Shown here: positions 10,267-52,556 of the stretch, piece by piece
How the letters are laid out: each line of letters begins with the position of its first letter
Position numbering within the stretch: position 1 is the stretch's first letter
Virus record (IMG/VR): IMGVR_UViG_3300046516_001816
Coordinates: 220,984-284,983 of that record
Strand: one strand, 5' to 3'
Length of the DNA: 64,000 nucleotides
Notes under the pieces: model-generated
The model's database searches: none
What the model saw: the letters and a program-made list of their open reading frames with translations, nothing else
Told to the model about the DNA's origin: nothing
Position numbers and translations under genes: made by a program

Positions 10267-10629
10267 ATGTTTCAAAAGCTCCAGGCTTTATGGGCGCGTG
10301 TGCAACCACTCATCACCTTTGCGCAGACGCGTCGTCTGACAGCCAAGACCTTTAGCGATATGTTCACCAACTGGAACGGCGACGTCGATCCAGCACGCTT
10401 GGTGGGCTATGGTTTCGTGATGCTCGGTGGCATTCAGTTTCTGTCGCTCTCGCTCTACGACACCCTGAAAAATCACACGTTCAATTACATGGGGTTCTCC
10501 ACTGGCCTCGTGGCGATCTCCGGTGCCATCACAGCTGCGGCCGCTGGGGTGCGCTGGAAGCAACTGGCTGAAGCGCCGATGCCTCCGGCAGGTGACCCCG
10601 TGTTCAACCCGCCGAACGCGAATGGTTGA
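10267..10629 (+). CDS. two-TM membrane protein (holin-like topology)
   Basis: AGGAG RBS; two hydrophobic segments; function not established. Confidence 0.7.
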   Translation: MFQKLQALWARVQPLITFAQTRRLTAKTFSDMFTNWNGDVDPARLVGYGFVMLGGIQFLSLSLYDTLKNHTFNYMGFSTGLVAISGAITAAAAGVRWKQLAEAPMPPAGDPVFNPPNANG

Positions 10630-10639
10630 TAGTATTTAC

Positions 10640-11230
10640 CGCCGCCCAGTAGAAAGTTACTCGGGCGTTATGGTATGCGGAGAGAAATCTCTGGATCATG
10701 GAATGCGTTAGATAGGGTTAGACACTGTCTGATGAGCGGTGCAAGTCCGCAGCGGTTTTGGGGGGATGCGCAATGCTAACTCTTGAGGCCGCCCAGGTGC
10801 AACGCCTGCGAAACCTCGTGGCACAGACTCCCTGGGTCTGGTGGTGGTAGGGATGGCTTTAGCTCAGATACTGTCGGGATGACAGAAAAATGGCGGGCAG
10901 CGGAAGGAGAGAACGGGCCTTCTTTGATCCTTATCGGTTTAGCCGCGTTGTAACAGTCTGCTCACGAGTTACCGTGCTCGACTGCCAGGTTTACCAGACC
11001 TGGAACGGTACGCCCAGTATAGCTGGGAAGTTGTAGCCTAGTTGATGCTTCGGCTCCTAGGACGCAGCCTGCAAGAGATGATGGTGTTCGGTGCGTGGGT
11101 CATTCACGCAAGCGTCAGAGACTGGCTGTCTCTGGAACCAGGATAAACTTATCGAAACGGTCGTCTCCCCGGATGAGATAAGCGGAACTGCTTCACACCC
11201 GTCTCTTGTGGGATGCGGATCCCTTTTTTT
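10640..11230 (+). ncRNA. candidate large structured non-coding RNA (~590 nt)
   Basis: No credible ORF. More than 12 hairpins/stems, GAAA/GCAA/UUCG loops, two similar UGCAA T-loop-like hairpins, G-U-rich stems pointing to the + strand, and a 3' hairpin plus U-tract. Confidence 0.65.
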
Positions 11231-11251
11231 ATTTTGTCAACTTGCCATGAC

Positions 11252-11845
11252 ATGCAAACGTATACAAACGAAGCGTTGCTAGCCCGTATTCAAGTGATCG
11301 ACGGATTCTTTAGTGAGGCCGCGCTACGAGACCTGGAGTTCTTCTGGCGAGCGCCGATCTGGAAGTACGACTGGAAGACCAGTGGCACCGAGTATAACTT
11401 CTGGGGTACCCGACTGATGGGACTGGGGCAAGCCGAAACCCTCACCAACTGCGAGCACCAGTTTCAGGACAGTGCGATGAATGCGTTTCTGGGACGTGTC
11501 TGGTATGCGATTCGGGACCACTATCTGCCCGATCATGAACTCATTCGTTGTGCAGGAGCAGCGTACAACCAGGGGGCGGATGGCTTTATCCACACGGACA
11601 ATGCAGCGGAAGGTTACACGAGCATTCTGGTGTACACGCATCCGTACTGGGAAGCGCATTGGGGTGGCGAGATTGGCTATTACACTCTGGATCAGAGTGA
11701 GCTACTCACCATGATTGCCCCCAAGCCTGGACGCTTACTCATTGCCCCGGGGTTTATTCCGCATCGTCCGTTTGCCCCCGGTCGTAATGTCGATAGTTTG
11801 CGCGCCGCACTGAATTTTAGATCAAGACCAAAGGTAAACAAATGA
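11252..11845 (+). CDS. 2OG-Fe(II) oxygenase (prolyl-hydroxylase-like)
   Basis: HxD (IHTD), WGGE, distal His (IPHR) and Arg (LRAALNF). Confidence 0.85.
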   Translation: MQTYTNEALLARIQVIDGFFSEAALRDLEFFWRAPIWKYDWKTSGTEYNFWGTRLMGLGQAETLTNCEHQFQDSAMNAFLGRVWYAIRDHYLPDHELIRCAGAAYNQGADGFIHTDNAAEGYTSILVYTHPYWEAHWGGEIGYYTLDQSELLTMIAPKPGRLLIAPGFIPHRPFAPGRNVDSLRAALNFRSRPKVNK

Positions 11846-12465
11846 AACAATTGGGGAATCTGGAAGACGAGATCTGGGTGCTCGATGATCTGATTCCTAA
11901 GGATGTCCAGGCACGCTTATCCGCTACGGTCCAAAGTCCCGTCTGGGGGTATGATTGGCGCACGTCTTTGTCGGATCGCTATCCGGTCTGGGGTCGCAGT
12001 GTGGCTTCCCCGATGCGCGGGGACTTGAATGTCCAGGAGCAGTTACTCCAAGACACCCAGCAGCTCGACTCCGCTGAGATCTGGAAACTGTTCACGAAGA
12101 GCTTTCTGCGCGGACACAGTCTGCTGCGCGCCTTTGTGATTGGCTTTCACCATGGCTGCGAAGGCTACGCCCACGGGGACAACGTCGATCCGGAAACGGG
12201 CACCGAGATGGGTAACGGGCTGAACCTCACCAACTATCGCTCTACCATTGTGTTTGCCTTCAATGAGTGGGACGCCGCGTGGGGCGGGGAAATGGTGCTC
12301 TATAACCGGGAGATGACGGACATTGTCATGGCCGTTGAGCCCAAACCCTTTCGAGTGCTGAGCTTTCCGGGGTTCCTGCCGCATAAACCGAATGGTCCGA
12401 CCCGTGTCTCGGATCAGTTCCTGCCGCTTTTGTCGTATCGCTCCAAACAAATCCTTCGCAAGTGA
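11842..12465 (+). CDS. 2OG-Fe(II) oxygenase paralog
   Basis: AHGD, WDAAWGGE, LPHK; the Arg seen in the other two copies is replaced. Confidence 0.8.
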   Translation: MKQLGNLEDEIWVLDDLIPKDVQARLSATVQSPVWGYDWRTSLSDRYPVWGRSVASPMRGDLNVQEQLLQDTQQLDSAEIWKLFTKSFLRGHSLLRAFVIGFHHGCEGYAHGDNVDPETGTEMGNGLNLTNYRSTIVFAFNEWDAAWGGEMVLYNREMTDIVMAVEPKPFRVLSFPGFLPHKPNGPTRVSDQFLPLLSYRSKQILRK

Positions 12466-12472
12466 GACCACT

Positions 12473-13093
12473 GTGAGTATTATTCAAACGTCCCGTAAAG
12501 AGTTGGCCGACCGCGTACAAGTCCACGATGGACTGATTCCTGTCGGCCTGCAAGAACACCTCACCGCCCTGGTGACCAAGCCCATTTGGGCGCATGGCTG
12601 GAAGTCCAATGCCGAGAACGACAAGTATTCGTTCTGGCACGCCCACTTCGCCGGCGGCGATCTGCACAACCGTGTCAGCTGCGAAACCGAGCTTGACGAG
12701 AAGGGACCGGTGGCGGTGGCTCGCCTCTGGGATCTGCTGAGGAAGACGATTCTGCAAGGTCATGAGCCGTTGCGTGCGTACGGCAACGCCCACACGTTTG
12801 GCTGTGAGGGCTACATCCATGTCGACAATCGAGACAGCGACAACTATTTCTCGACCATCATCTATACCAACAAGAACTGGAAAGCCTGGTGGGGTGGTGA
12901 AACGCTCTTCTACGGACTGGACCAGAAGGACATTATCAAGGCCTGTGCCGCGCTGCCGTTTCGGATCGTGACCTTCCCGGGACATATCCCGCACAAGGCC
13001 AACGCGCCGGCGCGCGACGTGCCCGACCTGCGCACATGCATCGTGTTCAAGTCGCACCTGAAACAGGCCCCGGCACAACCGACGGAGGTGTAA
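12473..13093 (+). CDS. 2OG-Fe(II) oxygenase paralog
   Basis: IHVD, WWGGET, IPHK, LRTCIVFK; GTG start inferred. Confidence 0.85.
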   Translation: MSIIQTSRKELADRVQVHDGLIPVGLQEHLTALVTKPIWAHGWKSNAENDKYSFWHAHFAGGDLHNRVSCETELDEKGPVAVARLWDLLRKTILQGHEPLRAYGNAHTFGCEGYIHVDNRDSDNYFSTIIYTNKNWKAWWGGETLFYGLDQKDIIKACAALPFRIVTFPGHIPHKANAPARDVPDLRTCIVFKSHLKQAPAQPTEV

Positions 13094-13094
13094 C

Positions 13095-13610
13095 GTGCTT
13101 GTGGACCGTGAAAAAATCATGGCCTTTTTAGAGGCTCACCATGCCTCTACGGCCGGTCACAGTGGTAGGACCTTCCTGCGCCATTTGGAGGGCACTGAGC
13201 GCATTCTAAGGGACTGGGGATGCCCTCAACACTTGCAGCTGGCTGGATTGTTCCATTCGATCTATGGGACGAACATTTTCACGGTTCAAAGCGCGTCGTT
13301 TGGTGAGCGCGAAGTGATCTCGTCCTTGATTGGACCGATCGGCGAATGGTTGGCGTATCTGTTTTGTGTGACGGCGCGACCCGATGCCTTCTTCATTGCC
13401 AAGACCTCCAAGAGCATGCGGCATCGCTACACGCAGATGCCCATTGCGGTGCGTGACGATGATTTGCGTGATCTGTTTCTGCTCGAAGCGGCGAACCATA
13501 TCGAACAGAACATGAACCCTCCGCTCGTGAAACGCATCCACGACCTCTACCAAGACGATCCTACTGTTACCGACGCCGCCAAGTACGGGATGTGGGAATT
13601 CTTTAGCTAA
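13095..13610 (+). CDS. HD-like DUF6817-type protein
   Basis: HSGRTFLRHLEGT...WG...AGLFHSIYGT signature. Confidence 0.7.
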   Translation: MLVDREKIMAFLEAHHASTAGHSGRTFLRHLEGTERILRDWGCPQHLQLAGLFHSIYGTNIFTVQSASFGEREVISSLIGPIGEWLAYLFCVTARPDAFFIAKTSKSMRHRYTQMPIAVRDDDLRDLFLLEAANHIEQNMNPPLVKRIHDLYQDDPTVTDAAKYGMWEFFS

Positions 13611-13615
13611 GAACA

Positions 13616-14116
13616 ATGAAAACCATTCTCTACCATGGTTCTGGGTTTGACCAGGACGAACTGATGCCAGGCTTTTTACGCTCCGGCAAGCTGGTGCAGT
13701 GGGATCAAACGGAGTCGAACGAATGGCTCTACACGACGACCGACAAGCAAGAAGCGATCAGTCAGGCGTTCGCGTCGATGATCGAGAAAACCTACGAGAG
13801 CATGGGGTATGCCACCCACGGCAATCGGATCGAGATTCAGTTCCCGAAGGAAGTGGCGCCCAGTGTGGAGGAGTTGAAAAAGCTCCAGCTGTTCCTGTAC
13901 ACGATCCGTCTGGAGGACGAGGACGGGTGGGTCAAGAACAACAACGAACACAACCAGATCAAGACCGAGTGGAAAACGCAGTCGATTATCGATCGCAACA
14001 TCATCCACAAGGAACAGATCGATCTGGCTGGGTGGCTCGCAAACAAGCAATTGGATTTACGAGTGGGCGGTAAGGCGAATAATCCGAACGCCGCACCCGG
14101 TTGGTTACTCTGGTAA
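13616..14116 (+). CDS. jumbo-phage hypothetical protein (N-terminal LYHGS)
   Basis: 166 aa; the YHGS start resembles ADP-ribosyltransferase-fold proteins, unverified. Confidence 0.7.
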   Translation: MKTILYHGSGFDQDELMPGFLRSGKLVQWDQTESNEWLYTTTDKQEAISQAFASMIEKTYESMGYATHGNRIEIQFPKEVAPSVEELKKLQLFLYTIRLEDEDGWVKNNNEHNQIKTEWKTQSIIDRNIIHKEQIDLAGWLANKQLDLRVGGKANNPNAAPGWLLW

Positions 14117-14293
14117 TAGAGGTCAGGCTTCGGCCTGGCTTTTATGCCGACTGAAAGAAATCTCAGAAATATATAATGTCCTTGGTATCCCTGGATAAAA
14201 ATATACCCCAGGACCATCTATGAGAAGAGGGGGTTTCCCCTACCTATGCCGTCTCTTCATTCAATCAAGCAACGAAACCAAGGAGTCGTACAA

Positions 14294-16138
14294 ATGAAGC
14301 AAGAACAATTTGTGGTTGCAAAGCAGGAATTCGAAATGGGTCTGGTCGGTCAGTTCTGCTGGGCTGAGTTCCGCGACAATATGAAGGCGGTCGCTGTCGA
14401 CGAAGACCAGATGGAAAAGTGGTTCGACTGGCTCGCGAACCTGATGGCCAATGACATGACGGGCGCGGATGACGACGGTTTCCGGCCGCAGGAATTCGAG
14501 TACAAGCTCGACGTCGAAATCATGTATCGCGATGAAGCGAAAGAAAATTCGGACGAAGTCGATGTCTCGAAAGCGGGACTGGTGCTGCGTCTGGTGCCGA
14601 TGAGCGAGCGCGTGCAGGCAGTGATCCAAGAAGGCATGAGCATGACCGCGTTTCGTTGGCCGGTGATCAACAATGAGGGCGTGTTGATGATCGAAGCGTT
14701 CAGCTACGACATGCTCAGGTATGCGCGGCCGGTCGTCTCGAAACTGGTGCAGGGAGTGCAGGCGCCGGCGACCATGGCCGAAGACACGCTGGTGCAAGAG
14801 CGCGATCCGGATTGGGGTGAAGAGCCGGCAAGCCAGAAGAAACTGACGACGCGTCCGGTGTTTGGCTGGCTGAAGGAAGCCCTCACCAAGGGCGTGGTCT
14901 CGTACGAGGATTTGAAGGAGCTCCTCAAGCAGCCGCTGTTCTTCAGTCTGGCTCACAAGGAAGACACGTATGTTTCGTTCTTCCGCAAGCTGGACAAGTA
15001 TCTCGAAGGTGAATTCCCGGTGCTGAACAAGGAGCGCCCGCTCTTTGGTCTGCGTTTTTCCAACACTCAGGAGACCATGTATGGTCTGCTCACCATCACG
15101 TACCACTCGCAGCGTCACGACGCCGACGTCAAACGCAATACGCTGAACGTACTCTGCCCGCTATCCTGGGGCAATGACGCCGATTGGCCGGTGATCATCG
15201 ATCCGGAAGTGTCGTTCCAGCCGATGCACTACACAGGCACGTTGGCCGAACACGCGGCCACCGAAGTGCGCTTCAGTCTGCAACGCGCAGCGAGCCGCAT
15301 CAACCTGGAAGCACCGGTAGTGGATCAGCTGCAAAGCTTCCTGAACGACGGTACGTTGGCGCAGATTATCGATCGCCGTCTGGTGGAAGCCAATATCCAC
15401 CATGAAGTGAAAAGCGTCTTCGTGCAGCCGAAGGGAAGTTTTACCTACGTGCAAACCGAAGAGCCGCTGCAATTCCATGCTCAGGCGTTCTTCTTCCCCG
15501 CTCATGAGCCCTCGTGGGAGCCGAACGAAGCGATCGCACTCCTGGATCTGGTGATGGACTACACGGAGCCGTTTTTCGTGTGGCGCCATGACGCGGGGCA
15601 GGTGGAATTGTTGGAGCGCAAGCCGAGCAGCGACAAACATGCGGGTGTGTCGCAGACGCTGAAGTTCTCGGTGGGCGACGGAGCGAAGTTCCAGACCATG
15701 GCGGATCCTGCCCAGCAGGCTGAGAGCACGATGGATCTGAACGCACTGCGCGCCCAAGCGGCCAAGCATGCGATGGAAAGCAGTGCCAATGCTCGCCCCA
15801 TCGTCGGTCAGGCCGCGATGCCGATGGAAGCCGTGCATCAGGGTTTTGACATCGCCCTGGAAATGACCTTCCTGGATTCGCGTGTGCCCTATCCGGTGCT
15901 CAATGCCTTTATGGGTTTGTTCCCGGATCTGTTTGTAAAGTATGCGCGACTGCTGGAAGAGCTTAGCTATCGTGGCGTGCAGATCAATCAGGAACCGGTG
16001 ATGCTGGAACTGAGGGGGCAAGTCAGTGACATCCTGGGCGATCAGAAGACGGAGGTGGTGTTGCGGCTGGTCTGCGTCGATGTGTCCGATGATAGTATCG
16101 GCTCGTCGGTGGATGTGAAGTACTGTTTCAAGCGTTAA
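14294..16138 (+). CDS. large hypothetical protein
   Basis: AAACCAAGGAG leader before ATG 14294; upstream AT-rich TATATAAT at ~14170 is a possible early promoter. Confidence 0.8.
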   Translation: MKQEQFVVAKQEFEMGLVGQFCWAEFRDNMKAVAVDEDQMEKWFDWLANLMANDMTGADDDGFRPQEFEYKLDVEIMYRDEAKENSDEVDVSKAGLVLRLVPMSERVQAVIQEGMSMTAFRWPVINNEGVLMIEAFSYDMLRYARPVVSKLVQGVQAPATMAEDTLVQERDPDWGEEPASQKKLTTRPVFGWLKEALTKGVVSYEDLKELLKQPLFFSLAHKEDTYVSFFRKLDKYLEGEFPVLNKERPLFGLRFSNTQETMYGLLTITYHSQRHDADVKRNTLNVLCPLSWGNDADWPVIIDPEVSFQPMHYTGTLAEHAATEVRFSLQRAASRINLEAPVVDQLQSFLNDGTLAQIIDRRLVEANIHHEVKSVFVQPKGSFTYVQTEEPLQFHAQAFFFPAHEPSWEPNEAIALLDLVMDYTEPFFVWRHDAGQVELLERKPSSDKHAGVSQTLKFSVGDGAKFQTMADPAQQAESTMDLNALRAQAAKHAMESSANARPIVGQAAMPMEAVHQGFDIALEMTFLDSRVPYPVLNAFMGLFPDLFVKYARLLEELSYRGVQINQEPVMLELRGQVSDILGDQKTEVVLRLVCVDVSDDSIGSSVDVKYCFKR

Positions 16139-44175: not shown

Positions 44176-46680
44176 TCAGGCAGCGATGCCCATCACTTCA
44201 GCCCGAGCAATACGCTCACCCGCAGCATGGGCTTGATGCAAGAAGCGCCAGTCCAGCTGCTCGTAATCGTAGTTCCACTCGTTAAAGAACGCCGCCGCCA
44301 CGTAACCGTTCACGATACAGGGCGGACCTTCCAACACCGGAATGTAGACCGGCGTCATCGGATCTTCATCCAGCTCGACCACGGTGCGTTTGACGAAGCC
44401 GTTCAGGTGCGCGTACTCGACTTCGCCCTCGTAGACACTGTTGATGTCCTTGAGGCCTTGAGTGAGCCCACCTTCGACTTCAGCGCGCATATACGCCGCG
44501 TCGCCCGACCACCACCACTGCTTGCCGCCCGCCGCCGGTCGACTCCAGAGCGGATGGTCAGCCACCCAGCGCGTGTGTGGATCTTCCTTCATGGTGAGCA
44601 TCTTGCGACCCGTACCCAGAATCGCTTCATGCAAGCGCAACATCTTCGCCGGACCCGTGGGCGTCATCAACAGATCCCCGGGTACCAGCGACTCGATCGG
44701 CTGCCAGGTATAGTCGCCCATCAGCACGCGCGAGCCCGCGACGAAACACGACACGGAGCAATGACTGCCAGTACCGCCACCGGTGCAGACCGGCGGAGGC
44801 GGAGGCGGCTGACCGTTGATATAACCAGCCGGCGGTTGACCCGACTGCGGCCAGCCCGAGATATGACAGTAGCCCGAACGCGGACCACCTTGCCACACAC
44901 CCGTGTATGCACCGTACGCCGTGTAGACCCCGTTGCCGTTGGCCAGCCAGCTGTACGACCAGCTGTTGGAGAGCGTGAAGTTATCGCCCAGACTCGAGGA
45001 GAACGTCATGCCATCGAGCGACCCGTTCAGCACAATCACCGTGATCACGTTGTTCCAGCGGTAAAAGCCCTGGACTTGTGCGCCACCCGGCGCATTGAAC
45101 CAGGTCCAATTCCCCGTGACCGTGTTGTCCCCGCCGGTGATCACCGGGCTGGTCCCCTGATAGATCAGCAAGTCACGACCAAAGTTCCCACCACACGCGC
45201 CCGAGTAGTTCACGTTGTAGTACTGCGTGCCTGTCTCATAGAACGCAAAGCCCGAGTTGTTAATCTGACCCTGGCCCCAGTTCAAGTCGGCTTCCAGCTG
45301 ACCGAGGTTCCACGGCCCCAACGCCCCGAGGTGATACTGCGCGGACGTGCCGTGCGGATTCGAGCGGTTGTTGATGTGGCCCCACATCACGTTGTAGTTC
45401 GAATTGAAATAATTCTGGTACGCCGTTTGGGCTGCGCTCAAGGCCGCATTGAACTGGTTCGCCGTGTAGCCACTGATCTGGCTGATATTCACCGCGTGCG
45501 GATTCGCGGTATTGGCGATGTGGTTGTTGAGCGTCGTCTGCAAGCTCGCCAGGGCGCTCGCCGTCCACGTACCAATCTGCGCCGGCGTCACTACGTGCGG
45601 GTTGGCCTTATTGGCAATGTGCGTATTGAGCGTCGTGGTGTCGGCACTCGCCTCGGTCGACACGGGGGTTGTTGCATTGGTGATCGCCGTCTGAATCTGC
45701 GAGATCGTCAACGTCCCCAATCCCGTGGTCGAATCCTGGTGGGGATTGTTCAGGTTGTTGATGTGCGCATTCATCGTGGTCGCATTCGTGCTGATCGTAC
45801 TGGTGATCGCCGTTTGCGCTGCACTGATGTTGCTGTTCACGGTGGACGTCGCATACATCCCCAACTGGACCAGGGTGACCTGGTGCGGATTGTTGGTGTT
45901 GGCTTCGTGGGTATTTAACGTCACCACCAACGCCGCATCGCCTGCCTGCATCGCGGTATGTTCCACCGCAATCGCGGCGGTTTCTTCCGCTTGCGTGTAG
46001 GCGCCCAACTGATGCGCCATCAACTGGTGCGGGTTGGTGCGATCCGCTTCGTGGGCTGCGAGCAGCGCCATCTGCGTATTGAGCGGACCCAGCGCCAGTT
46101 GTTCCTGCGCGTCAGCGTAGGCTTTAATCGCATCCTGCGAGATCGGGTCACCCATCAACGAGAGCTGCGTCATGCGTTGCAGCGTATGCACCACGTATTC
46201 AAACGTGATCATCCCCGCTTGCCCGATGTCATGATACTGCGCGGACACGGGGGTTGATTGCAGCGAATCAATCACTGAGGGCCACTTGGTCGGACGGGTA
46301 TCGGGTTCAGCTTGCAGCAGGTCAGCGACGATCCCATTTTGCGGCGTCTGATAACCCGCACCCAGGGCCTGATAGTCGATCTTCACATTGGCCGACACAG
46401 CCGGATCCAGAATCACCACCACACCACAGATCGTGTCGGCGTTGGGTTTACCGTACTTGGTCGTGGCTAAGTCATACACCACGGCAGCGAAGTACTGGGC
46501 ACTGGTGAGCTTCTGACCGCTCGCCACGTCCGTCACCACGAGCGTCGACGCGAAGAACGCCCCGTAGTTCGGCGCCAGCGCCCGAATCTTCGTGGTCCCA
46601 ATCGCATGCACTTCGCCCGTAATGTCGTTCGTTGTCGCCTTCCCCGTGGGGTCCAGCGGCAAAGTCAAAACGGTTGACAT
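44176..46680 (-). CDS. tail fibre protein with C-terminal Hint domain
   Basis: Shared N-terminal LPLDPTG domain; HxxNxxNPH repeats; C-terminal CFVAGSRVLM...VADHP...CIVNGYVA. Confidence 0.8.
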   Translation of the reverse strand: MSTVLTLPLDPTGKATTNDITGEVHAIGTTKIRALAPNYGAFFASTLVVTDVASGQKLTSAQYFAAVVYDLATTKYGKPNADTICGVVVILDPAVSANVKIDYQALGAGYQTPQNGIVADLLQAEPDTRPTKWPSVIDSLQSTPVSAQYHDIGQAGMITFEYVVHTLQRMTQLSLMGDPISQDAIKAYADAQEQLALGPLNTQMALLAAHEADRTNPHQLMAHQLGAYTQAEETAAIAVEHTAMQAGDAALVVTLNTHEANTNNPHQVTLVQLGMYATSTVNSNISAAQTAITSTISTNATTMNAHINNLNNPHQDSTTGLGTLTISQIQTAITNATTPVSTEASADTTTLNTHIANKANPHVVTPAQIGTWTASALASLQTTLNNHIANTANPHAVNISQISGYTANQFNAALSAAQTAYQNYFNSNYNVMWGHINNRSNPHGTSAQYHLGALGPWNLGQLEADLNWGQGQINNSGFAFYETGTQYYNVNYSGACGGNFGRDLLIYQGTSPVITGGDNTVTGNWTWFNAPGGAQVQGFYRWNNVITVIVLNGSLDGMTFSSSLGDNFTLSNSWSYSWLANGNGVYTAYGAYTGVWQGGPRSGYCHISGWPQSGQPPAGYINGQPPPPPPVCTGGGTGSHCSVSCFVAGSRVLMGDYTWQPIESLVPGDLLMTPTGPAKMLRLHEAILGTGRKMLTMKEDPHTRWVADHPLWSRPAAGGKQWWWSGDAAYMRAEVEGGLTQGLKDINSVYEGEVEYAHLNGFVKRTVVELDEDPMTPVYIPVLEGPPCIVNGYVAAAFFNEWNYDYEQLDWRFLHQAHAAGERIARAEVMGIAA

Positions 46681-46696
46681 GATTGTTTCCTATTCT

Positions 46697-48103
46697 TTAA
46701 TGGTACGAATTCGCGTACACCTGCGCATTCAACTGATTGACCCAGTCCTGATACAACCAGCCCCCGATCTGATACGCGGTCACCCCGTGCGGATTGCTAC
46801 CATTGCCTGTGTGACCATTGATCCAGTTCGCTTGGGAGTTCAACGCGTTGGCTGCCGGCGTCGAGTACCCGTTCTGAATCTGGGCCGTGATCTGGGCACC
46901 CGTCCACGTGCCCACTTGGGCGGCCGTCACCCCGTGCGGGTTCGAATGGTTCGCAATATGGTTGTTGATCGCGGTCTGCTCGGCGTTGATACTCGCCGTA
47001 TCCCATGCGCCGATTTGAGTCAGGGTCAACTGGTGCGGATTGGCGCGACTGGCCACGTGAGCCGTAAGCGCAGCATCCTGCGTATTCATCTGCGTCGAGA
47101 TCGGCGTGATCGCGGCACTGATCGTGGTGCTGATCTGCGCGGTGGTTTGCGCATTCAATTGAACCAAGGTGACCTGGTGCGGGTTACTGTGGTTGGCGAT
47201 GTGCTCGTTCATATCGAGCGAGTCCGACGCCAGCTGCGCATTGATCGCGTTTTTGATCGCGTTCAGGTTCGCATCCGTTTCCGCCGTGGTGTAGCCACCA
47301 ATGCTGTCCGCGGTATCGTGGTGCGGATTGTTGTGGTTGGTCGCATGCGCCTGAATGTCGTTGTTGACCCCCAGGTCAGCGCTTTGACGGTTGCTCGCTT
47401 CCACCGCAATCTGACTGTCCACATTGCTCGACGCGTACACATTCACCTGTGTAAGTGTCGTTTGGTGTGGATTGTTGTAGTTCTGGATATGGGCCTGCAA
47501 GGCGGCGGCAAACGTCGAGATGTCCAACGTGCGACCGGTCAACTGCTGGTCAATCCAGGTGAGCGTAGAGTCGTAGCTCGCGGTCTTGGCCAAAGCCATC
47601 GCATTCAAGCACAGCTCCAGTGCCGTGACGACGTAGTCCCAGTCGTACGTATCACCCAGCCAGTGCATATGCGGCACCACCGGGTAGGCGTTGGGCTTGC
47701 CTGTGATATTGTTCAGCGCCACCGCTCGATCATCGTTGGCGAGCGTCTCCAATTCCTGAAGCAAGGTGCCCGTCGGATTGGACTTCGGACCCCCCAGGGC
47801 TTGATACGAGAGCGACACATTGGGCGAGACCGTGGGGTCGGTGACGACGACCACGCCCCAGACTTCTTCGCCGGTGAGCTGCGTGGCTTCGGTGTCCAGA
47901 AACTGGAACTCAAACTGCGCGCTTGTCAGGGGCTTGTTGGTGAACAGGTCCCACAACTGCATGCTCGCGCCAAAGAACGCGCCTGCTTGCGGAGCGATCG
48001 CCCGGTTCGGCGCCGTCCCAATCGCGCGGTTTTCCCCCGTCACGTAGTTGTTATTGCTGTCCCCCGTCAAATCCAACGGGTAGCGGTAGATATTCGGAAT
48101 CAT
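46697..48103 (-). CDS. tail fibre protein paralog
   Basis: YPLDLTG N-domain and HxxNxxNPH repeats. Confidence 0.8.
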   Translation of the reverse strand: MIPNIYRYPLDLTGDSNNNYVTGENRAIGTAPNRAIAPQAGAFFGASMQLWDLFTNKPLTSAQFEFQFLDTEATQLTGEEVWGVVVVTDPTVSPNVSLSYQALGGPKSNPTGTLLQELETLANDDRAVALNNITGKPNAYPVVPHMHWLGDTYDWDYVVTALELCLNAMALAKTASYDSTLTWIDQQLTGRTLDISTFAAALQAHIQNYNNPHQTTLTQVNVYASSNVDSQIAVEASNRQSADLGVNNDIQAHATNHNNPHHDTADSIGGYTTAETDANLNAIKNAINAQLASDSLDMNEHIANHSNPHQVTLVQLNAQTTAQISTTISAAITPISTQMNTQDAALTAHVASRANPHQLTLTQIGAWDTASINAEQTAINNHIANHSNPHGVTAAQVGTWTGAQITAQIQNGYSTPAANALNSQANWINGHTGNGSNPHGVTAYQIGGWLYQDWVNQLNAQVYANSYH

Positions 48104-48116
48104 CTCGTCTTCCTAC

Positions 48117-49589
48117 TTAGTTGTGCACGCTGGCCAAGTAGTTGATCGCGTTGGCCGCCGACCCACCCGGACCCTGCAAAAGACTGATGGCATACGCCAG
48201 CTGACCCGACGTGTACGCGCCTCCGGTGTTGGAGACGTTATCGCCGTGGGGGTTGCTGTAGTTCGTCACGTGCGACTGGATCGTCCCGTTCAACGAGTTG
48301 ATCTGATTGGCCAGTGACGTCCACGCGGAGTTGATGCTGTTGTTCATCGTCGTCGCACTGTAGACGCCGGAGCCGTCCACGTTCGAGGTGACGATATTGG
48401 AATACACATCGCCGTGCGGATTGCCTGCGTTATTGGCATGCGAGTTAAACGGCACGATGATATTGGTGCTGATCGTATTGTACGTCCACGTGCCCACGTT
48501 CGCCGCGGTGTCGCCGTGCGGATTGTTCGTGTTGCCCGTGTGCGCTTGCAATGCGCTTTGAAACGTATTGACCTGCGACTGCAAGGTATTGGCAGCGGCC
48601 GTGACAGCGGCCGCAATCTGCGGGGTCGTCCACGTGCCGATCTGGGCAGCGGTGACCTGGTGCGGATTGTTGTAGTTCTGGATGTGCGCGTGTTGCGTGC
48701 TTTCATTGGCCGCAATCGTGGCTTCCAGCGCCGTTTGCATCGCTGTCATCGCGGCATCGGACTGCGCGCGCGTCATGCCACCGACTTGCGCCGGGGTCAA
48801 AGCGTGCGGGTTATTGCCGTTGTTGATGTGCGCGGTGAGCGAGGCTTCCACCGCCGCATCGCCTGCCTGACGGGTGGTGGTTTCCCCGGCGATATTCGCA
48901 ACCGTTTCCGTGGTGGTGAACGAACCGATCTGATGCGCGCTCACTTGGTGCGGATTGGTAAAGTCACTTTCGTGCGCTTGCAGTGCCGCATTGGCCGTGG
49001 CAATGTAGTTCTGCAATTCGGCGACCACGCCCTGGGCATAGGCGAGCAGAGCTTCTTGCGCTGCGCCCTGACCTTGCGTAATCGCTTTACCCAGCGTGTC
49101 GGTGGCCGAAACCAGATACTCGGTCCCAAACACATCATCGGCGTGGTGCTTGTGGGGTGCAGGCGGATACACACTTTGCTTGGCCTGTACTTCATCCCAC
49201 GTCACCGGTGCATCATTGAGATCGAGTCCCGCCAACGCTGCTTGGGCGGCAACACTGTTGAGGCTATTGATGCCACCCACAGCCTGATAGGTGACGCTCA
49301 CTTGATTGCTGACCGTGGTGTCTACAATCAGAATCACGGCATCGACTTGCTGACCGTATGCCACCGAGCTATCCAGATCCATCTCAGCCGGATAATACTG
49401 CACGTCTTTGGTGAGCGTGAGTCCCGAGGTGAGGTCTTTCACCACCACCGAGTCGCGAAAGAACAACCCGTAGTTCAACGGGAAGGCGCGCGTACCGACG
49501 GTGCCGATGCTGTGTACTTCGTTTTGAATGAGGTTGCTTGACGCCGAACCCGTGGGATCCAGCGGCAACACTAAATTCGGCGTGCTCAT
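48117..49589 (-). CDS. tail fibre protein paralog
   Basis: LPLDPTG N-domain and HxxNxxNPH repeats; GGAG RBS before ATG 49589. Confidence 0.8.
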   Translation of the reverse strand: MSTPNLVLPLDPTGSASSNLIQNEVHSIGTVGTRAFPLNYGLFFRDSVVVKDLTSGLTLTKDVQYYPAEMDLDSSVAYGQQVDAVILIVDTTVSNQVSVTYQAVGGINSLNSVAAQAALAGLDLNDAPVTWDEVQAKQSVYPPAPHKHHADDVFGTEYLVSATDTLGKAITQGQGAAQEALLAYAQGVVAELQNYIATANAALQAHESDFTNPHQVSAHQIGSFTTTETVANIAGETTTRQAGDAAVEASLTAHINNGNNPHALTPAQVGGMTRAQSDAAMTAMQTALEATIAANESTQHAHIQNYNNPHQVTAAQIGTWTTPQIAAAVTAAANTLQSQVNTFQSALQAHTGNTNNPHGDTAANVGTWTYNTISTNIIVPFNSHANNAGNPHGDVYSNIVTSNVDGSGVYSATTMNNSINSAWTSLANQINSLNGTIQSHVTNYSNPHGDNVSNTGGAYTSGQLAYAISLLQGPGGSAANAINYLASVHN

Positions 49590-49667
49590 CTGAATGAACT
49601 CCAGACCCTTATTAACAGACAAAAGGGCTCAAGGTGCCCGAAAGCACCCTGAGCCCCAAAGAGAGAT

Positions 49668-52556
49668 TTACGACGAGAGGTTCCAAGCCGAGAAGCCCGA
49701 CGGCACTGCGTTGGTAAACGCATTGACGCCTGGATTGAGCGTGAGCGTATCGCCCTTCTCGGAGATCGACACGCCGAGGTACACCGGACCGGTCGTGCCG
49801 CCCGGGGCGAGAATCGCCGCGATCGAGATACCGCCCGTACCGGTGGCCGGGTTTTGGTTCGCGAGGATGTCGCCATTCCACTGACCCGAAGCCGGGTTGT
49901 AGAACCACACCTTCTGCGCGGCGAAGTCCACCGCTACGCCGAGTTCGTCGCCTGTGGCGGGCAGGGTGGCCCCGATGCCGCCATTGGTGAACGCACCGTT
50001 GTAGCTGATGCCGCTGGTGGCGGTCGACGGCTGCGTGAACATCATGATCGAGTTCGTATCGAAGCCGAGCGAGTGCGTGCCGGCGGTGCTGGCATTGCCC
50101 AGACCGAAACCCACCCCGCCATCGAGACTGTTGATCGACACTTCTGCGTAGACCTTGCCCGTGGTGCGACCGTAGGTGGCGAGCTCCGTGCGCCAGGCAT
50201 TGCTGGTATTGCTGGTGACCGTCATGTTGCCATTGGAGAGCACCATGTCGGACGGCAACACCGTCACGTTGAAGCTCATCGCGGTCGTCGCCGGCGGCGT
50301 CGTACCCGAGTTGTTCACAGCCTGGACCACGGTCTTGAACGCGGTGGTCAGCTGCGACACGACGTTGTTCAATTCCGACACGGTGGCAAAGGTTTCGGCC
50401 ACCGCGTAGATGATCCCAGCCGGTGCGGTGTTTTGCACCGAGATCGAGCCCAGGAAGTTGTTGTTGTACTCGCTGAAGCCATTGACCGTGATCTGGTTGG
50501 CGCCGCCCGGCGTTTGCATCCACAGCGTGGCGAGCTTGGTCCCGGAATTCACCGTGTAGCCAAACTTCACCGTCGTGGTGTTGCGTCCCGTGAGCGAGAG
50601 CACTTGCAGCTCCACGCTATCCGCCGAGGCGGTGTTACGCACCGACATGCGCACGTACCACGAACCCGATTGCGTGTCGCCCGTGGCATCGCCACCGGTC
50701 ACCAGCATCTGCAAGTCCGGATAGACGGTTTGACCCGCCGTGCCTTGCATCGCCATTTGCGCGATCGGGGTCCAGAGCAACGGATCCGTCGTATCAACTG
50801 CGGCCGGAATCGTGTCCTGCGGGGTGACCATTTGACTGGTCCACAACTGAGCATTGGTCGACGCCGTGATCGAGCTCGAGAGGGCTGCTTGCGACAGACC
50901 ATTCAAAGCCGTCGCGTTGGCTGCCGTCCCACTCAGAATCGCCGAGGTCAGCTGCGCTTGCGTGAGACCAAACGCTTGCGTGGCATTGGCTGCGGTGCCC
51001 GACAGGATCTGTGTGGTGAGCGCCGCAATCGTCATGCCGCCCAGCTGGTTAGCGTTCGCCGCCGTACCGTTCAGGATCTGCGTGGTCAACTGCGCCACCG
51101 TCATGCCGTTGAGCTCCGTGGCGTTGGCCACCGTCGCATTCGCAATGTAGGTATCCCATTGCGCCGGGGTCATGCCGCCGAACATTTCCGAGTCGCTTGC
51201 CGTGCCACCGGAGACGTACGAGATCAGCTGCGCGGGCGTCATGCCGCCCACCATCGTCGCGTTGTTCGCCGTACCAGCCAGAATAGCGGACGTCACCTGC
51301 GCCATCGTCTGGCCACAGAAGAGCGACGTGTCCGCTGCCTTACCCGTCTTGAGCAAGTAGCTCGCCAGCGTGCTGTCCATCTGAGCCGTCGAGTAGGCTC
51401 CGACTTGCGCTGCCGTCACCTGGTGAGGGTTGGCATAGTTCGTAATGTGGGTGTTGAGCACCGCATTCGAACCCTGGTTCGCAATGGCCGCCGCGGTTGC
51501 CGCCGGCGTCATGAACAGGTTGTTGGCCGTGCCTGCGACCGCATCGCTATTTTGCGCGACACTGAAGTTCGGCACATTGCCCAAGCCCACTTGCGCCGCA
51601 CTGGTTTGGTGCGGGTTGTTGTAGTTGAGAATGTGCGCTTGCAGGTTATTGCCCACCGAACTGTTGATCGCGACCATGGTGGTGGCCGGGGTCATATACA
51701 GATTCGTGGCCGTGCCCGTCTGGGCATCGGTGTTGCTCGCCGGTGCGTAGTTCGCGACATTGCCCAGCCCGACCTGCGTTTGCGTTACGCGGTGCGGATT
51801 GTTGTAATTGGCAATGTGAGCGTTAAACGAACCCAGCACCTGCGTTTGGATCGCCGCGGCGGTGGCCGCCGGTGTCATATACAGCGTCGTCGACGTGCCC
51901 GCTGCCGCGTCGCTGTTTTGCGCCACCGCGTAGTTCTGGACATTGCCCAGCCCGACTTGCGCGGAGCTCACATGGTGCGGGTTGCCGAAGTCGGCTTCGT
52001 GCGCAGCCAAGCCCGTGGAGCCGGTCGATTGCAGTGCGGTCGTGACGCTGTTAATCGCCCCCACCACGCTACCCATATTAACCATGTCATTCACGTCCCA
52101 CGCATGCGCGGTGGGCGGGAACGCATAGGGCGTACCACTGACTTCTTCCCACGACGTGATGCGCGGGTTGTCCGCGACGTCGGCGAGAATCGTGTTGATC
52201 TGGGAGGTCGCCACCGTCCACTGTCCACCAACGGTTTGGTAGTTCAGCTTAACGATGCCAGCCAGATTCGTGTTGATAAACAAAAGCGAACCGTAGACGC
52301 GCATAGCGGTCGAACGGCTGGCCGAGATAAACCAATGCGCCGGGTAATAATCGACGCCTTCCTCCAAGGTGTGCAGGGTACCCTGCGTGTCTTGATAGGT
52401 AACAGCGAGCGTATCAGCGAAGTACGGGGCAAACTCCGGCACGATGATGTGCTGATCCCGAAAGTTCTGCGCGACCAGTTGCTGCTGTTCCCCTGAAATC
52501 AGGTTCGAAACCAACGAACCCGTCGGGTCGAACGGATATGAGATGGGTGTTGTCAT
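49668..52556 (-). CDS. tail fibre protein with C-terminal SPRY/B30.2-like domain
   Basis: YPFDPTG N-domain; NPH..QVGLGNV.N repeats; GTA.NA repeats; GKVYAEV..GFGLG..LGVAVD..VWFYN. Confidence 0.8.
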   Translation of the reverse strand: MTTPISYPFDPTGSLVSNLISGEQQQLVAQNFRDQHIIVPEFAPYFADTLAVTYQDTQGTLHTLEEGVDYYPAHWFISASRSTAMRVYGSLLFINTNLAGIVKLNYQTVGGQWTVATSQINTILADVADNPRITSWEEVSGTPYAFPPTAHAWDVNDMVNMGSVVGAINSVTTALQSTGSTGLAAHEADFGNPHHVSSAQVGLGNVQNYAVAQNSDAAAGTSTTLYMTPAATAAAIQTQVLGSFNAHIANYNNPHRVTQTQVGLGNVANYAPASNTDAQTGTATNLYMTPATTMVAINSSVGNNLQAHILNYNNPHQTSAAQVGLGNVPNFSVAQNSDAVAGTANNLFMTPAATAAAIANQGSNAVLNTHITNYANPHQVTAAQVGAYSTAQMDSTLASYLLKTGKAADTSLFCGQTMAQVTSAILAGTANNATMVGGMTPAQLISYVSGGTASDSEMFGGMTPAQWDTYIANATVANATELNGMTVAQLTTQILNGTAANANQLGGMTIAALTTQILSGTAANATQAFGLTQAQLTSAILSGTAANATALNGLSQAALSSSITASTNAQLWTSQMVTPQDTIPAAVDTTDPLLWTPIAQMAMQGTAGQTVYPDLQMLVTGGDATGDTQSGSWYVRMSVRNTASADSVELQVLSLTGRNTTTVKFGYTVNSGTKLATLWMQTPGGANQITVNGFSEYNNNFLGSISVQNTAPAGIIYAVAETFATVSELNNVVSQLTTAFKTVVQAVNNSGTTPPATTAMSFNVTVLPSDMVLSNGNMTVTSNTSNAWRTELATYGRTTGKVYAEVSINSLDGGVGFGLGNASTAGTHSLGFDTNSIMMFTQPSTATSGISYNGAFTNGGIGATLPATGDELGVAVDFAAQKVWFYNPASGQWNGDILANQNPATGTGGISIAAILAPGGTTGPVYLGVSISEKGDTLTLNPGVNAFTNAVPSGFSAWNLSS

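What the first reader, a model, noticed from the sequence alone, without database searches (positions are those of the whole stretch)
11252..13610. Operon of three tandem 2OG-Fe(II) oxygenases plus a DUF6817-type HD-like protein
Seen: three closely spaced paralogs, each with HxD...H and WGGE, followed 1 nt later by a His-rich protein (HSGRTFLRHL, AGLFHSIYGT). The middle copy has Leu (DQFLPLL) where the others have the likely 2OG-binding Arg (DSLRAAL, PDLRTCI), so it may have altered chemistry or be a non-catalytic partner. Inference: a multi-step modification pathway. Candidate substrates are the Asn-Pro-His repeats of the tail fibres, the neighbouring structured RNA, host proteins or a small metabolite. 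The substrate cannot be determined from sequence.
Basis: partly seen in the sequence, partly recalled or inferred. Interest (0 to 1): 0.65.

Follow-up and report, generated by a model that had tools for sequence, protein, structure and literature searches.

The report
Phage aspartate-to-aminomalonate enzyme operon
A 285-kb phage carries close relatives of the bacterial enzyme pair SmaO/SmaX, which turns aspartate in a peptide into hydroxy-aspartate and then aminomalonate, with the first enzyme in three diverged copies; the pair had been described only in bacterial peptide-antibiotic gene clusters, and its target in this phage is unknown.

Summary
Four co-directional genes lie at 11252-13610. 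Three are paralogous Fe(II)/2OG oxygenase-like genes (A, B, C). The fourth (D) is a DUF6817 gene.

The pair C+D matches the SmaO/SmaX cascade described in 2025 (PMC12186529), which converts peptidyl Asp to beta-hydroxy-Asp and then to aminomalonate:
- C is 48% identical to SmaO from the Stenotrophomonas sma cluster.
- D is 39% identical to SmaX and keeps all seven residues shown by mutagenesis to be essential, at identical spacing.
- D is modelled as an HD fold without the canonical HD aspartate.

Oxygenase and DUF6817 genes are adjacent in 78 of 80 viral contigs, and fused in several.

A and B are duplicates specific to the jumbo-phage lineage. B alone, in 4 of 79 family members, has Leu at an otherwise invariant Arg. 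It keeps HxD...H and is under purifying selection.

The transcription unit probably also includes gene E (13616-14116), which has an ADP-ribosyltransferase fold. It follows a conserved structured RNA of about 600 nt.

The substrate here is unresolved. The genome has no Asp-Gly tract, precursor peptide or peptidase-transporter. In about 40-kb phages the gene next to the pair often encodes a virion-module protein with an extreme Asp/Gly tract.

Verdict: a new variant of a known kind.

The parts
10640..11235 (+). Conserved non-coding element of about 600 nt, a candidate structured RNA, directly upstream of the operon. Whether it belongs functionally to the operon is unknown.
   Evidence: It has islands of invariant sequence across four loci whose proteins are only about 50% identical. 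Indels are not multiples of three and conserved strings shift frame. nhmmer finds it in an independent locus, L014, at E 7e-97, and only in jumbo-clade loci. RNAalifold predicts 113 pairs, 51 with compensatory changes. There is no Rfam match.
11210..11233 (+). Intrinsic-terminator-like hairpin plus T-run that ends the upstream RNA, 19 nt before gene A
   Evidence: The hairpin and T-run are conserved in L004, L007 and L014.
11252..11845 (+). Gene A, 197 aa: SmaO-like Fe(II)/2OG oxygenase paralog with the canonical motif set, and the fastest-evolving copy
   Evidence: It has HxD, WGGE, distal His, and basic residues at +7, +13 and +19 (R, R, R) after that His. It is 29% identical to SmaO (E 3e-30). 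Orthologues in L004 and L007 are 41-42% identical.
11842..12465 (+). Gene B, 207 aa: SmaO-like paralog with Leu in place of the family-invariant Arg at +13, and a 12-13 aa insertion after HxD
   Evidence: Arg at +13 occurs in 75 of 79 unique family members. The four exceptions are the B orthologues of the window, L004, L007 and L014, and all have Leu. Orthologues are 67-68% identical. dN/dS is 0.08-0.14, with dS saturated.
12473..13093 (+). Gene C, 206 aa: the orthologue of SmaO (Asp beta-hydroxylase) that sits next to the SmaX-like gene
   Evidence: It is 48% identical to the oxygenase of the Stenotrophomonas sma cluster (E 2e-59) and 46% identical to that of a second sma-type cluster, L010. 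It is 60-73% identical to the single or third copy in related phage loci.
13095..13610 (+). Gene D, 169-171 aa: SmaX-like DUF6817 protein, an atypical mono-iron HD-fold oxygenase
   Evidence: Pfam PF20680 E 6.5e-24. It is 39% identical to SmaX (E 6e-37). H20, H28, H52, T57, R93, N132 and Q136 correspond to SmaX H31, H39, H63, T68, R104, N143 and Q147 at a constant offset of 11. The model has pLDDT 97.8. Its HD-fold matches reach Z 12 against small alarmone hydrolases and Z 7.8 against PhnZ.
13616..14116 (+). Gene E, 166 aa: ADP-ribosyltransferase-fold protein, the last gene before the terminator-like site
   Evidence: PHROG 13483 E 1.5e-44. Invariant H7-x-S9, Y39 and E118 in 36 homologues. The model has pLDDT 88.6. 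All fold matches are ART-fold proteins: Tpt1/KptA at Z 8.9 with rmsd 1.9 over 82 residues, then Arr and the toxin A subunits. The Atlas gives Arr and DUF6886. It follows D in the window, L004, L007, L014 and L009/L013, but stands alone in phage Noxifer.
14120..14146 (+). Terminator-like hairpin with a T-rich tail after gene E
   Evidence: This is a consensus scan only.

Best explanation
Genes C and D are a phage-borne version of the SmaO/SmaX two-enzyme cascade.

C is an Fe(II)/2-oxoglutarate oxygenase that hydroxylates the beta-carbon of an aspartate residue in a peptide or protein. D is a single-iron, atypical HD-fold oxygenase (two His and one Asn as ligands, with Ser where the HD aspartate would be). 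[quoted passage not shown] The net change on Asp is -14.016 Da.

A and B are lineage-specific duplicates of C. They most likely hydroxylate other sites or other targets. B keeps the iron triad but has lost a basic residue that every other member keeps. That residue is probably either the 2OG C5-carboxylate ligand or a ligand of the substrate carboxylate. B is therefore expected to have altered co-substrate or substrate chemistry rather than to be decaying.

Shown here:
- homology to the characterised enzymes;
- conservation of the catalytic residues;
- the HD fold of D;
- obligate pairing of the two gene families in phages;
- purifying selection on all copies.

Inferred:
- the chemistry in this phage;
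- a peptide or protein substrate;
- the roles of A and B.

Unknown: the substrate in this phage.
For: 1. One search found the only paper that mentions DUF6817, PMC12186529. It shows in vitro that SmaO (Fe(II)/2OG) makes beta-hydroxy-Asp in a DGDG motif and that SmaX (DUF6817) converts it to aminomalonate with one Fe. The mutants H31, H39, H63, T68, R104, N143 and Q147 are inactive.
2. Locus L093, from a Stenotrophomonas maltophilia group assembly, encodes a 57-aa precursor with the paper's core, GDGDGIPTL. It also has an ATP-grasp gene and a C39-peptidase transporter. Its DUF6817 protein carries the seven residues at exactly the paper's numbers. Window C is 48% identical to its oxygenase (E 2e-59). 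Window D is 39% identical to its DUF6817 protein (E 6e-37).
3. All seven residues are present in D and are invariant or nearly so in 62 homologues.
4. The model of D is very confident (pLDDT 97.8) and matches HD-domain structures only. The sequence has FHS where HD enzymes have HD.
5. 78 of 80 viral loci with a DUF6817 gene have a SmaO-like gene adjacent on the same strand. The other two are cut at the contig end. Eight loci carry fusions.
6. The cassette of three oxygenases, DUF6817 and gene E is conserved in L004 (177-kb contig), L007 (320 kb) and L014 (324 kb). The version with one oxygenase is in L009/L013.
7. In the tree, A, B, C and L009 form one clade (support 0.98). The bacterial sma-type oxygenase is its sister (0.95). 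A and B are sisters (0.94).
8. dN/dS is 0.08-0.16 for A, B and C.
9. In about 40-kb phages the large ORF next to the pair carries an extreme Asp/Gly tract in 19 of 66 dereplicated loci. That is 19 of 113 adjacent large ORFs against 1 of 245 non-adjacent ones. This fits SmaO's requirement for Asp followed by Gly and points to proteins as substrates in phages.
Against: - No enzyme of this phage has been assayed, and 39-48% identity does not fix substrate specificity.
- The 285-kb genome encodes no Asp/Gly tract, no DGDG peptide outside spurious frames and no C39 peptidase. An ATP-grasp search was uninformative because its control did not ring. So the known substrate type is missing here.
- A, B and C reach Pfam 2OG models only below the gathering score.
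- Which of the conserved basic residues (+7, +13, +19) binds 2OG could not be settled. The PDB profile alignments stop before +13, and no oxygenase model was made.
- Co-occurrence counts rest on related loci that are not independent.
Confidence: 0.66

Rival explanations
1. The chemistry is the same, but the substrate is a free amino acid or another small molecule (for example free Asp or a carrier-bound Asp, as proposed for the NRPS-linked SmaX homologues). The phage would then alter a metabolite pool rather than a protein.
For: PMC12186529 reports 52 NRPS clusters with SmaX homologues and leaves open whether the conversion there occurs on an amino acid or a peptide. No candidate peptide or protein substrate was found in this genome.
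Against: In those NRPS clusters the partner is a TauD-like oxygenase. Window C belongs to the SmaO type, at 48% identity, and that type acts on a ribosomal peptide. In other phages the pair sits beside Asp/Gly-tract proteins.
Confidence: 0.12
2. B is a non-catalytic partner or regulatory subunit of A or C. It has lost 2OG binding but keeps its fold and contacts.
For: B alone lacks the Arg at +13 that 75 of 79 relatives keep. A and B always occur together, in four loci. B is conserved.
Against: B retains HxD...H, WGGE, and the basic residues at +7 and +19. A pure scaffold would have no reason to keep these. Enzymes of this PHD/P4H-like type are often monomers (general knowledge). No evidence of binding was obtained.
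Confidence: 0.2
3. The oxygenases are nucleic-acid-modifying enzymes (AlkB, TET or JBP-like) that act on phage DNA or on the neighbouring large RNA, and D processes the oxidised product.
For: The RNA element directly precedes the operon in five distinct jumbo-phage loci. PHROG 274 is filed under nucleotide metabolism.
Against: The PHROG label 'DNA endonuclease V' is contradicted by the GenBank annotations of the same genes as 2OG oxygenases. The nearest solved relatives are protein prolyl hydroxylases. C is an orthologue of a peptide Asp hydroxylase. The RNA is absent from the other ~75 viral loci and from the bacterial clusters that have the pair.
Confidence: 0.04
4. D is a phosphohydrolase of the HD superfamily (an alarmone hydrolase like SAH or Mesh1, or a nucleotidase) that manipulates host (p)ppGpp. 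The oxygenases would be unrelated host-protein hydroxylases.
For: The best structural matches of D are small alarmone hydrolases and Rel/SpoT hydrolase domains (Z 11-12 over 140 of 169 residues).
Against: D lacks the HD aspartate (it has FHS) and has an invariant Asn as third ligand, as in SmaX. Identity to the hydrolases is 12-14%, against 39% to SmaX. Adjacency or fusion to an oxygenase is near-universal.
Confidence: 0.03
5. The genes form a PhnY/PhnZ-type or TmpA/TmpB-type pathway that hydroxylates and then cleaves a phosphonate, to obtain phosphate.
For: The enzyme logic is the same: a 2OG oxygenase followed by an HD oxygenase. PhnZ and TmpB appear among the fold matches (Z 7.4-7.8). Relatives occur in marine cyanophages.
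Against: The four-His, two-Asp diiron site of PhnZ and TmpB is absent. D has only the SmaX-type ligands. The oxygenases are of the PHD/P4H-like SmaO type, not the PhyH/TauD type.
Confidence: 0.02

Closest known systems
SmaO/SmaX cascade of the group-18 graspetide cluster of Stenotrophomonas (PMC12186529, J Am Chem Soc 2025)
   Same: The gene order is the same: an oxygenase followed directly by a DUF6817 gene. C is 48% identical to SmaO and D is 39% identical to SmaX. D keeps the iron ligands H/H/N and the four substrate-contact residues at identical spacing. Oxygenase-DUF6817 fusions exist in relatives, as the paper reports.
   Different: The setting is a 285-kb phage genome with no precursor peptide, no ATP-grasp ligase found and no peptidase-transporter. 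There are three oxygenase paralogs instead of one, and one of them lacks a family-invariant Arg. The genes are co-transcribed with an ART-fold gene and follow a large conserved RNA. The paper's survey lists RiPP and NRPS clusters only and does not mention phages.
PhnY/PhnZ and TmpA/TmpB (2OG oxygenase plus mixed-valent diiron HD oxygenase, C-P bond cleavage)
   Same: The two-step logic is the same: hydroxylation next to an acid group, then four-electron oxidative bond cleavage by an HD-fold enzyme. The fold is shared (Z 7.4-7.8).
   Different: D has one metal site, not two, with Asn instead of Asp as a ligand. The expected reaction cleaves a C-C bond, not a C-P bond. The oxygenase partner belongs to a different 2OG subfamily.
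Prolyl-hydroxylase-like 2OG oxygenases (PHD2/EGLN1, Pseudomonas PPHD, P4H; Pfam 2OG-FeII_Oxy_3)
   Same: These are the nearest solved structures by profile (E 0.005-0.1). They share the HxD...H triad and a basic residue at the start of the last strand.
   Different: The matches fall below the family thresholds. The N-terminal half is unrelated. The expected target residue is Asp, not Pro.
Tandem 2OG-Fe(II) oxygenase genes of T4-like cyanophages (PHROG 274)
   Same: They belong to the same PHROG. In Synechococcus phage ACG-2014g, two such genes are followed by a DUF6817 gene whose start overlaps the end of the second.
   Different: Identity to C is only 23-30%. In P-TIM68 the DUF6817 gene is not next to an oxygenase. 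No function has been tested.
Small alarmone hydrolases and Mesh1 (HD_4)
   Same: These are the best structural superpositions of D (Z 11-12).
   Different: The HD dyad and the other hydrolase metal ligands are not conserved in D. Sequence identity is 12-14%.

Membership tests
SmaX-type DUF6817 mono-iron HD oxygenase (gene D) | Match to Pfam PF20680 above the gathering score | tested here: met
   84.3 bits against a cut-off of 25.2, E 6.5e-24, covering profile positions 1-85 of 85. Confirmed in the genome search.
SmaX-type DUF6817 mono-iron HD oxygenase (gene D) | Iron ligands His39, His63 and Asn143 of SmaX | tested here: met
   They correspond to H28, H52 and N132 of the 169-aa product, with the same 24 and 80 residue spacings. 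All three are invariant in 62 homologues.
SmaX-type DUF6817 mono-iron HD oxygenase (gene D) | Substrate-contact residues His31, Thr68, Arg104 and Gln147, each essential in mutagenesis | tested here: met
   H20, T57, R93 and Q136 are present. Among 62 homologues H is found in 61, T in 62, R in 61 and Q in 54.
SmaX-type DUF6817 mono-iron HD oxygenase (gene D) | HD-domain fold without the HD aspartate and without ligands for a second metal | tested here: met
   Model pLDDT 97.8. The matches are HD-fold proteins. Ser53 is invariant where HD enzymes have Asp. Absence of a second site is read from the sequence only.
SmaX-type DUF6817 mono-iron HD oxygenase (gene D) | Fe(II)-dependent conversion of beta-hydroxy-Asp to aminomalonate | not testable with these tools
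   This needs an enzyme assay and mass spectrometry.
SmaO-type Fe(II)/2OG aspartyl beta-hydroxylase (genes A, B, C) | HxD...H iron-binding triad | tested here: met
   The triad is invariant in A, B and C and in 78-79 of 79 unique relatives.
SmaO-type Fe(II)/2OG aspartyl beta-hydroxylase (genes A, B, C) | Conserved basic residue at the start of the last strand (+13 after the distal His), the presumed 2OG C5-carboxylate ligand | tested here: inconclusive
   Arg is present in A and C, and Leu in B and its three orthologues. So the feature is met for A and C and not met for B. The role of this residue is inferred from its position relative to PHD2 and PPHD. The profile alignments to solved structures end before it.
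SmaO-type Fe(II)/2OG aspartyl beta-hydroxylase (genes A, B, C) | Full-length homology to the characterised SmaO | tested here: met
   C is 48% identical over 174 aa (E 2e-59). A is 29% identical (E 3e-30) and B is 29% identical (E 6e-24). All three fall in one clade with the sma-type enzyme as sister.
SmaO-type Fe(II)/2OG aspartyl beta-hydroxylase (genes A, B, C) | Match to a Pfam 2OG-Fe(II) oxygenase model above the gathering score | tested here: not met
   20-23 bits against a cut-off of 27. The characterised family itself is only weakly detected by these models: the precomputed hits of the sma-cluster oxygenases are marked 'weak'.
SmaO-type Fe(II)/2OG aspartyl beta-hydroxylase (genes A, B, C) | A substrate with Asp-Gly motifs encoded nearby | tested here: not met
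   The 285-kb genome has no Asp/Gly tract and no DGDG peptide in a plausible gene. The feature is met in 19 of 66 other phage loci.
RiPP (graspetide) biosynthetic gene cluster | Precursor peptide with leader and double-Gly site, an ATP-grasp macrocyclase and a C39 peptidase-transporter | tested here: not met
   No precursor was found. There is no Peptidase_C39 match, and that search's control rang in 7 genomes. There is no ATPgraspMvdD match, but that control rang nowhere, so the result is weak.
PhnZ/TmpB mixed-valent diiron HD oxygenases | Four His and two Asp that coordinate two irons | tested here: not met
   D has only the two His and one Asn of SmaX. Fold similarity to these enzymes is lower than to other HD proteins.
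ADP-ribosyltransferase fold, H-Y-E type (gene E) | ART fold with conserved His, Tyr and acidic residue | tested here: inconclusive
   All PDB matches are ART-fold proteins, but Z is only 7-9. H7, S9, Y39 and E118 are invariant. Their placement in the NAD pocket was not checked, because no coordinates were available.

The most novel reading that the evidence does not exclude
Phages use the SmaO/SmaX chemistry to install beta-hydroxy-aspartate or aminomalonate in proteins rather than in secreted peptides.

In many ~40-kb phages the target would be a long Asp/Gly tract of a virion-module protein. Modification would turn that tract into a dense, Gla-like metal-chelating polyanion.

The jumbo-phage lineage has expanded the hydroxylase to three specialised paralogs. 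One is an Arg-less form with new co-substrate or residue specificity. These would act on host or phage proteins that carry no recognisable tract.
Probability: 0.3. Interest if true: 0.8.

Novelty: new variant of a known kind. Interest (0 to 1): 0.62.

Why it matters
Aminomalonate has been reported in protein hydrolysates for decades without a known biosynthetic route. The first route, SmaO/SmaX, was described in 2025 and only for secreted peptide natural products.

If phages carry the same enzyme pair, aminomalonate or beta-hydroxy-Asp could be a viral protein modification. At least 80 viral contigs have the pair, often inside the virion gene module and beside proteins with extreme Asp/Gly tracts. 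Such a modification could affect metal binding, particle stability, DNA ejection or host manipulation.

The jumbo-phage operon adds a natural experiment in enzyme evolution. It has three paralogs, and one of them has lost a residue that the rest of the family never changes. All of this is directly testable with recombinant proteins and mass spectrometry.

Tried and rejected
- Rfam, at gathering thresholds on the whole window and at E up to 1 on 10500-11300, and tRNA scans gave nothing.
- Single-sequence PDB searches gave only insignificant hits.
- Profile searches against the PDB, with the whole family and with its C-terminal half, reached prolyl hydroxylases. The alignments stop before the +13 position, so the 2OG-binding assignment could not be tested residue by residue.
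- Complex prediction on A+B+C with B as partner returned 'no answer', and controls were not run. This is no evidence either way.
- The look-up of sequencing runs listed no run, so expression could not be examined.
- I searched for a substrate in this genome with DG..DG patterns in all six frames and with sliding Asp/Gly windows. The only hits are in short frames that overlap longer genes, or are isolated motifs in a 2537-aa and a 331-aa protein.
- The 630-aa gene downstream (14246-16138) is poorly conserved among related loci and has no conserved Asp-Gly site.
- PADLOC gave only a generic 2OG model.
- The PHROG label 'DNA endonuclease V' was rejected as an annotation artefact.
- The alarmone-hydrolase and PhnZ readings of D were rejected on ligand content.
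- The large protein-representative search was not run, because the word search and family scans had already placed the proteins.
Full report
**Setting.** The window is the last 64 kb of a 284,983-bp IMG/VR virus record that CheckV rates as complete. G+C content is 54-60%. The only cultured relative detectable at DNA level is Pseudomonas phage Noxifer, and only over 77 bases. The genome is therefore a jumbo phage without close isolates.

**Observation.** Between 11252 and 13610 lie four tightly packed genes on the + strand.
- A is 11252-11845. The upstream ATG at 11213 lies inside a terminator hairpin.
- B is 11842-12465 and overlaps A by 4 nt.
- C is 12473-13093 and starts with GTG, 8 nt after B's stop. 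An 87%-identical 206-aa homologue supports this start.
- D is 13095 or 13101-13610, beginning 1 nt after C's stop.

A, B and C are 27-35% identical to one another. They share HxD, WGGE and a distal Pro-His. They reach the Pfam 2OG-Fe(II) oxygenase models only below threshold (E 1e-4 to 1e-3). They also match PHROG 274 and the NCBIfam FlmC-type 2OG oxygenase model (E 1e-14 to 2e-10). A family profile finds PHD2, Pseudomonas PPHD and other prolyl hydroxylases in the PDB (E 0.005-0.1). D is a clear DUF6817 protein (E 6.5e-24).

**What D and C are.** A full-text search for DUF6817 returned one paper, PMC12186529.
- SmaO is an Fe(II)/2OG oxygenase that beta-hydroxylates the two Asp of a DGDG motif in the precursor SmaA.
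- SmaX uses a single iron held by His39, His63 and Asn143.
- His31, Thr68, Arg104 and Gln147 are also essential.

Among the homologues of C was an oxygenase from a Stenotrophomonas maltophilia group assembly. Its locus, L093, encodes a 57-aa peptide with the paper's core, GDGDGIPTL. It also encodes an ATP-grasp enzyme and a C39 peptidase-transporter. Its DUF6817 protein has the seven residues at exactly the published numbers. This locus is the sma cluster or an equivalent of it. A second cluster of the same type is L010.

Window C is 48% identical to the L093 oxygenase (E 2e-59), and window D is 39% identical to the L093 DUF6817 protein (E 6e-37). In D the seven residues are H20, H28, H52, T57, R93, N132 and Q136, a constant offset of 11. 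They are invariant or nearly so in 62 homologues. With that alignment D folds at pLDDT 97.8. The model matches HD-domain proteins only: small alarmone hydrolases and Rel/SpoT at Z 11-12 over 140 residues, PhnZ at Z 7.8 and TmpB at Z 7.4. The paper reports the same pattern for SmaX. D has Ser where HD enzymes have the metal-binding Asp. On this basis D is not an alarmone hydrolase and not a diiron PhnZ-type enzyme.

**Is the pairing real?** A scan of IMG/VR with the DUF6817 alignment returned 89 confirmed loci, of which 80 were fetched. Searches with HMMs of the oxygenase family and of DUF6817 gave these results:
- 78 of the 80 loci have a SmaO-like gene on the same strand directly beside the DUF6817 gene;
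- the other two (L064, L082) are cut at the contig end;
- in eight loci the two are one open frame.

The same order also appears in Synechococcus phage ACG-2014g, where two PHROG-274 genes are followed by an overlapping DUF6817 gene. It does not appear in P-TIM68.

**The three copies.**
- The full cassette (three oxygenases, DUF6817 and a gene of about 165 aa) recurs in contigs of 177, 320 and 324 kb: L004, L007 and L014.
- A more distant relative is L009/L013. Its proteins are named from Paraburkholderia sp. BCC1886 on a 286-kb contig. It has only the C-type copy.
- C orthologues are 70-73% identical, B 67-68% and A 41-42%.
- In a maximum-likelihood tree of 73 family members, A, B, C and L009 form one clade (support 0.98), with the bacterial sma-type oxygenase as sister (0.95). 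A and B are sisters (0.94).
- A and B are thus duplicates that arose within this jumbo-phage lineage.
- dN/dS is 0.08-0.16 for all three, with synonymous sites saturated. None of them is decaying.

**The Leu in B.** Aligned to the family HMM, 79 unique sequences give the following counts.

| Position | Residues found |
|---|---|
| First His and Asp of HxD | 78 each |
| Distal His | 79 |
| +7 after the distal His | Arg 76, Lys 2, His 1 |
| +13 | Arg 75, Leu 4 |
| +19 | Lys 70, Arg 9 |

The four Leu are exactly the B orthologues of the window, L004, L007 and L014. B also has a 12-13 residue insertion after HxD.

Its interpretation is less certain. The +13 Arg follows two prolines and opens a strand-like segment, Arg-Thr-x-Ile-Val-Phe-Lys. 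That segment resembles the strand carrying the 2OG-binding Arg of PHD2 and PPHD. This comparison rests on my own knowledge of those structures, not on a test. The profile alignments to solved structures end before this position, and I had no oxygenase model. The Arg could instead bind the substrate's carboxylate. In either case B should differ in co-substrate or substrate handling while still binding iron.

**Transcription unit and neighbours.** A hairpin plus T-run at 11210-11233 precedes A, and a weaker terminator-like site at 14120 follows gene E. The unit is therefore probably A-B-C-D-E.

Gene E (13616-14116, PHROG 13483) has invariant His7-x-Ser9, Tyr39 and Glu118. It folds at pLDDT 88.6. 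It matches only ADP-ribosyltransferase-fold proteins: Tpt1/KptA at Z 8.9, then Arr and bacterial toxin A subunits at Z 6.5-7.8. The Atlas search agrees. E is not tied to the enzyme pair. Noxifer has a homologue of E in another context and has no DUF6817 gene.

Upstream, 10640-11235 is a conserved non-coding element. It shows compensatory base changes in several helices and has no Rfam match. It is found only in the jumbo-clade loci, including one not used to build the model. These loci are also syntenic beyond the block. Its linkage to the operon may therefore reflect common descent only.

**Substrate.** The genome has no Asp/Gly tract, no plausible DGDG peptide and no C39 peptidase. The ATP-grasp search was uninformative. 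The Asn-Pro-His tail-fibre genes (44176-52556) are about 30 kb away and have 0-1 Asp-Gly each.

In the ~40-kb phage contigs the pair lies inside the virion module, next to portal, major head, terminase and internal lytic proteins. In those contigs the large ORF immediately beside the pair very often has an extreme Asp/Gly tract. It sits either at the C-terminus of the upstream gene or near residue 80-100 of the downstream gene.
- 19 of 66 dereplicated loci have such a tract.
- That is 19 of 113 adjacent large ORFs against 1 of 245 non-adjacent ones (Fisher p 1.5e-9; the loci are not independent).
- Two of these proteins carry a lysozyme-like domain or collagen-like fibre repeats.

SmaO needs Asp followed by Gly, so these tracts are the obvious substrate candidates. 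This supports a protein substrate in phages generally. It leaves the jumbo-phage target open.

**Comparison and novelty.** The chemistry and the enzyme pair are known (2025). The published survey lists RiPP and NRPS clusters only, and the paper does not contain the word phage. Literature searches found no phage report. Three things are new here:
- the phage setting without RiPP machinery;
- the triplicated hydroxylase with a conserved Arg-less member;
- the operon partners.

I file C+D as members of the SmaO/SmaX kind and the operon as a new variant of it.

Noticed in passing
window 10640-11235 (+); also L004:3502-4200, L007:3431-4118, L014:3468-4111, L009:3695-4404: A conserved non-coding element of about 600 nt ends in a terminator just before gene A. 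Sequence islands are invariant across loci whose proteins are about 50% identical. 51 of 113 predicted pairs show compensatory changes, including a long-range helix. There is no Rfam match. It contains CUGAUGAG...CGAAAC strings reminiscent of a hammerhead core, but no hammerhead model matches. It is a single copy in the genome and is restricted to the jumbo-phage clade.
   Followed up: partly
IMG/VR loci, e.g. L028:3453-5387, L022:3595-5406, L067:6438-8270, L078:6593-8380, L080:5633-7675: In ~40-kb phages the large gene immediately next to the SmaO-like/SmaX-like pair encodes a protein with an extreme Asp/Gly tract: (DGG)n, GDGDGGDGG and similar, sometimes after a (GC)n run. Counts are 19 of 66 dereplicated loci, or 19/113 adjacent against 1/245 non-adjacent large ORFs. 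These are likely substrates for poly-hydroxy-Asp or aminomalonate formation in virion-module proteins.
   Followed up: partly
window 13616-14116 (+): Gene E has an ADP-ribosyltransferase fold (best match the Tpt1/KptA NAD-binding domain, Z 8.9) with invariant H-x-S, Y and E. It is widespread in jumbo-phage contigs and present in Pseudomonas phage Noxifer (gp232) without the oxygenase cassette. Its target is unknown.
   Followed up: partly
PHROG 274; RefSeq cyanophage records such as NC_026924.1 (L002:2774-3962): PHROG 274 and the RefSeq annotations derived from it call these proteins 'DNA endonuclease V'. The GenBank versions of the same genes, and the homology found here, say 2OG-Fe(II) oxygenase. 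This is probably a propagated mislabel.
   Followed up: partly
L066, L084-L086, L089-L092: In these viral contigs the SmaO-like and SmaX-like domains are fused in one open reading frame of about 320-415 aa.
   Followed up: no
window 44176-52556 (-): Four tandem tail-fibre-like paralogs (468-962 aa) share PLDPTG-type N-termini and repeated H-x(6-7)-NPH motifs, 4-6 per protein. No link to the operon was found.
   Followed up: partly
P0017, P0081, P0114; L009 / L013: Homologues of C, D and E are named from Paraburkholderia sp. BCC1886 on a 286-kb contig. IMG/VR holds the same block on a 172-kb viral contig. This suggests a related jumbo phage carried in that isolate and offers a host clue for the clade.
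   Followed up: no
L011:5001-6697: In an Aliidongia genome bin a DUF6817 gene lies tail to tail with a 380-aa TPR plus 2OG-FeII_Oxy_5 protein, among housekeeping genes. This is a third type of context for the pairing.
   Followed up: no
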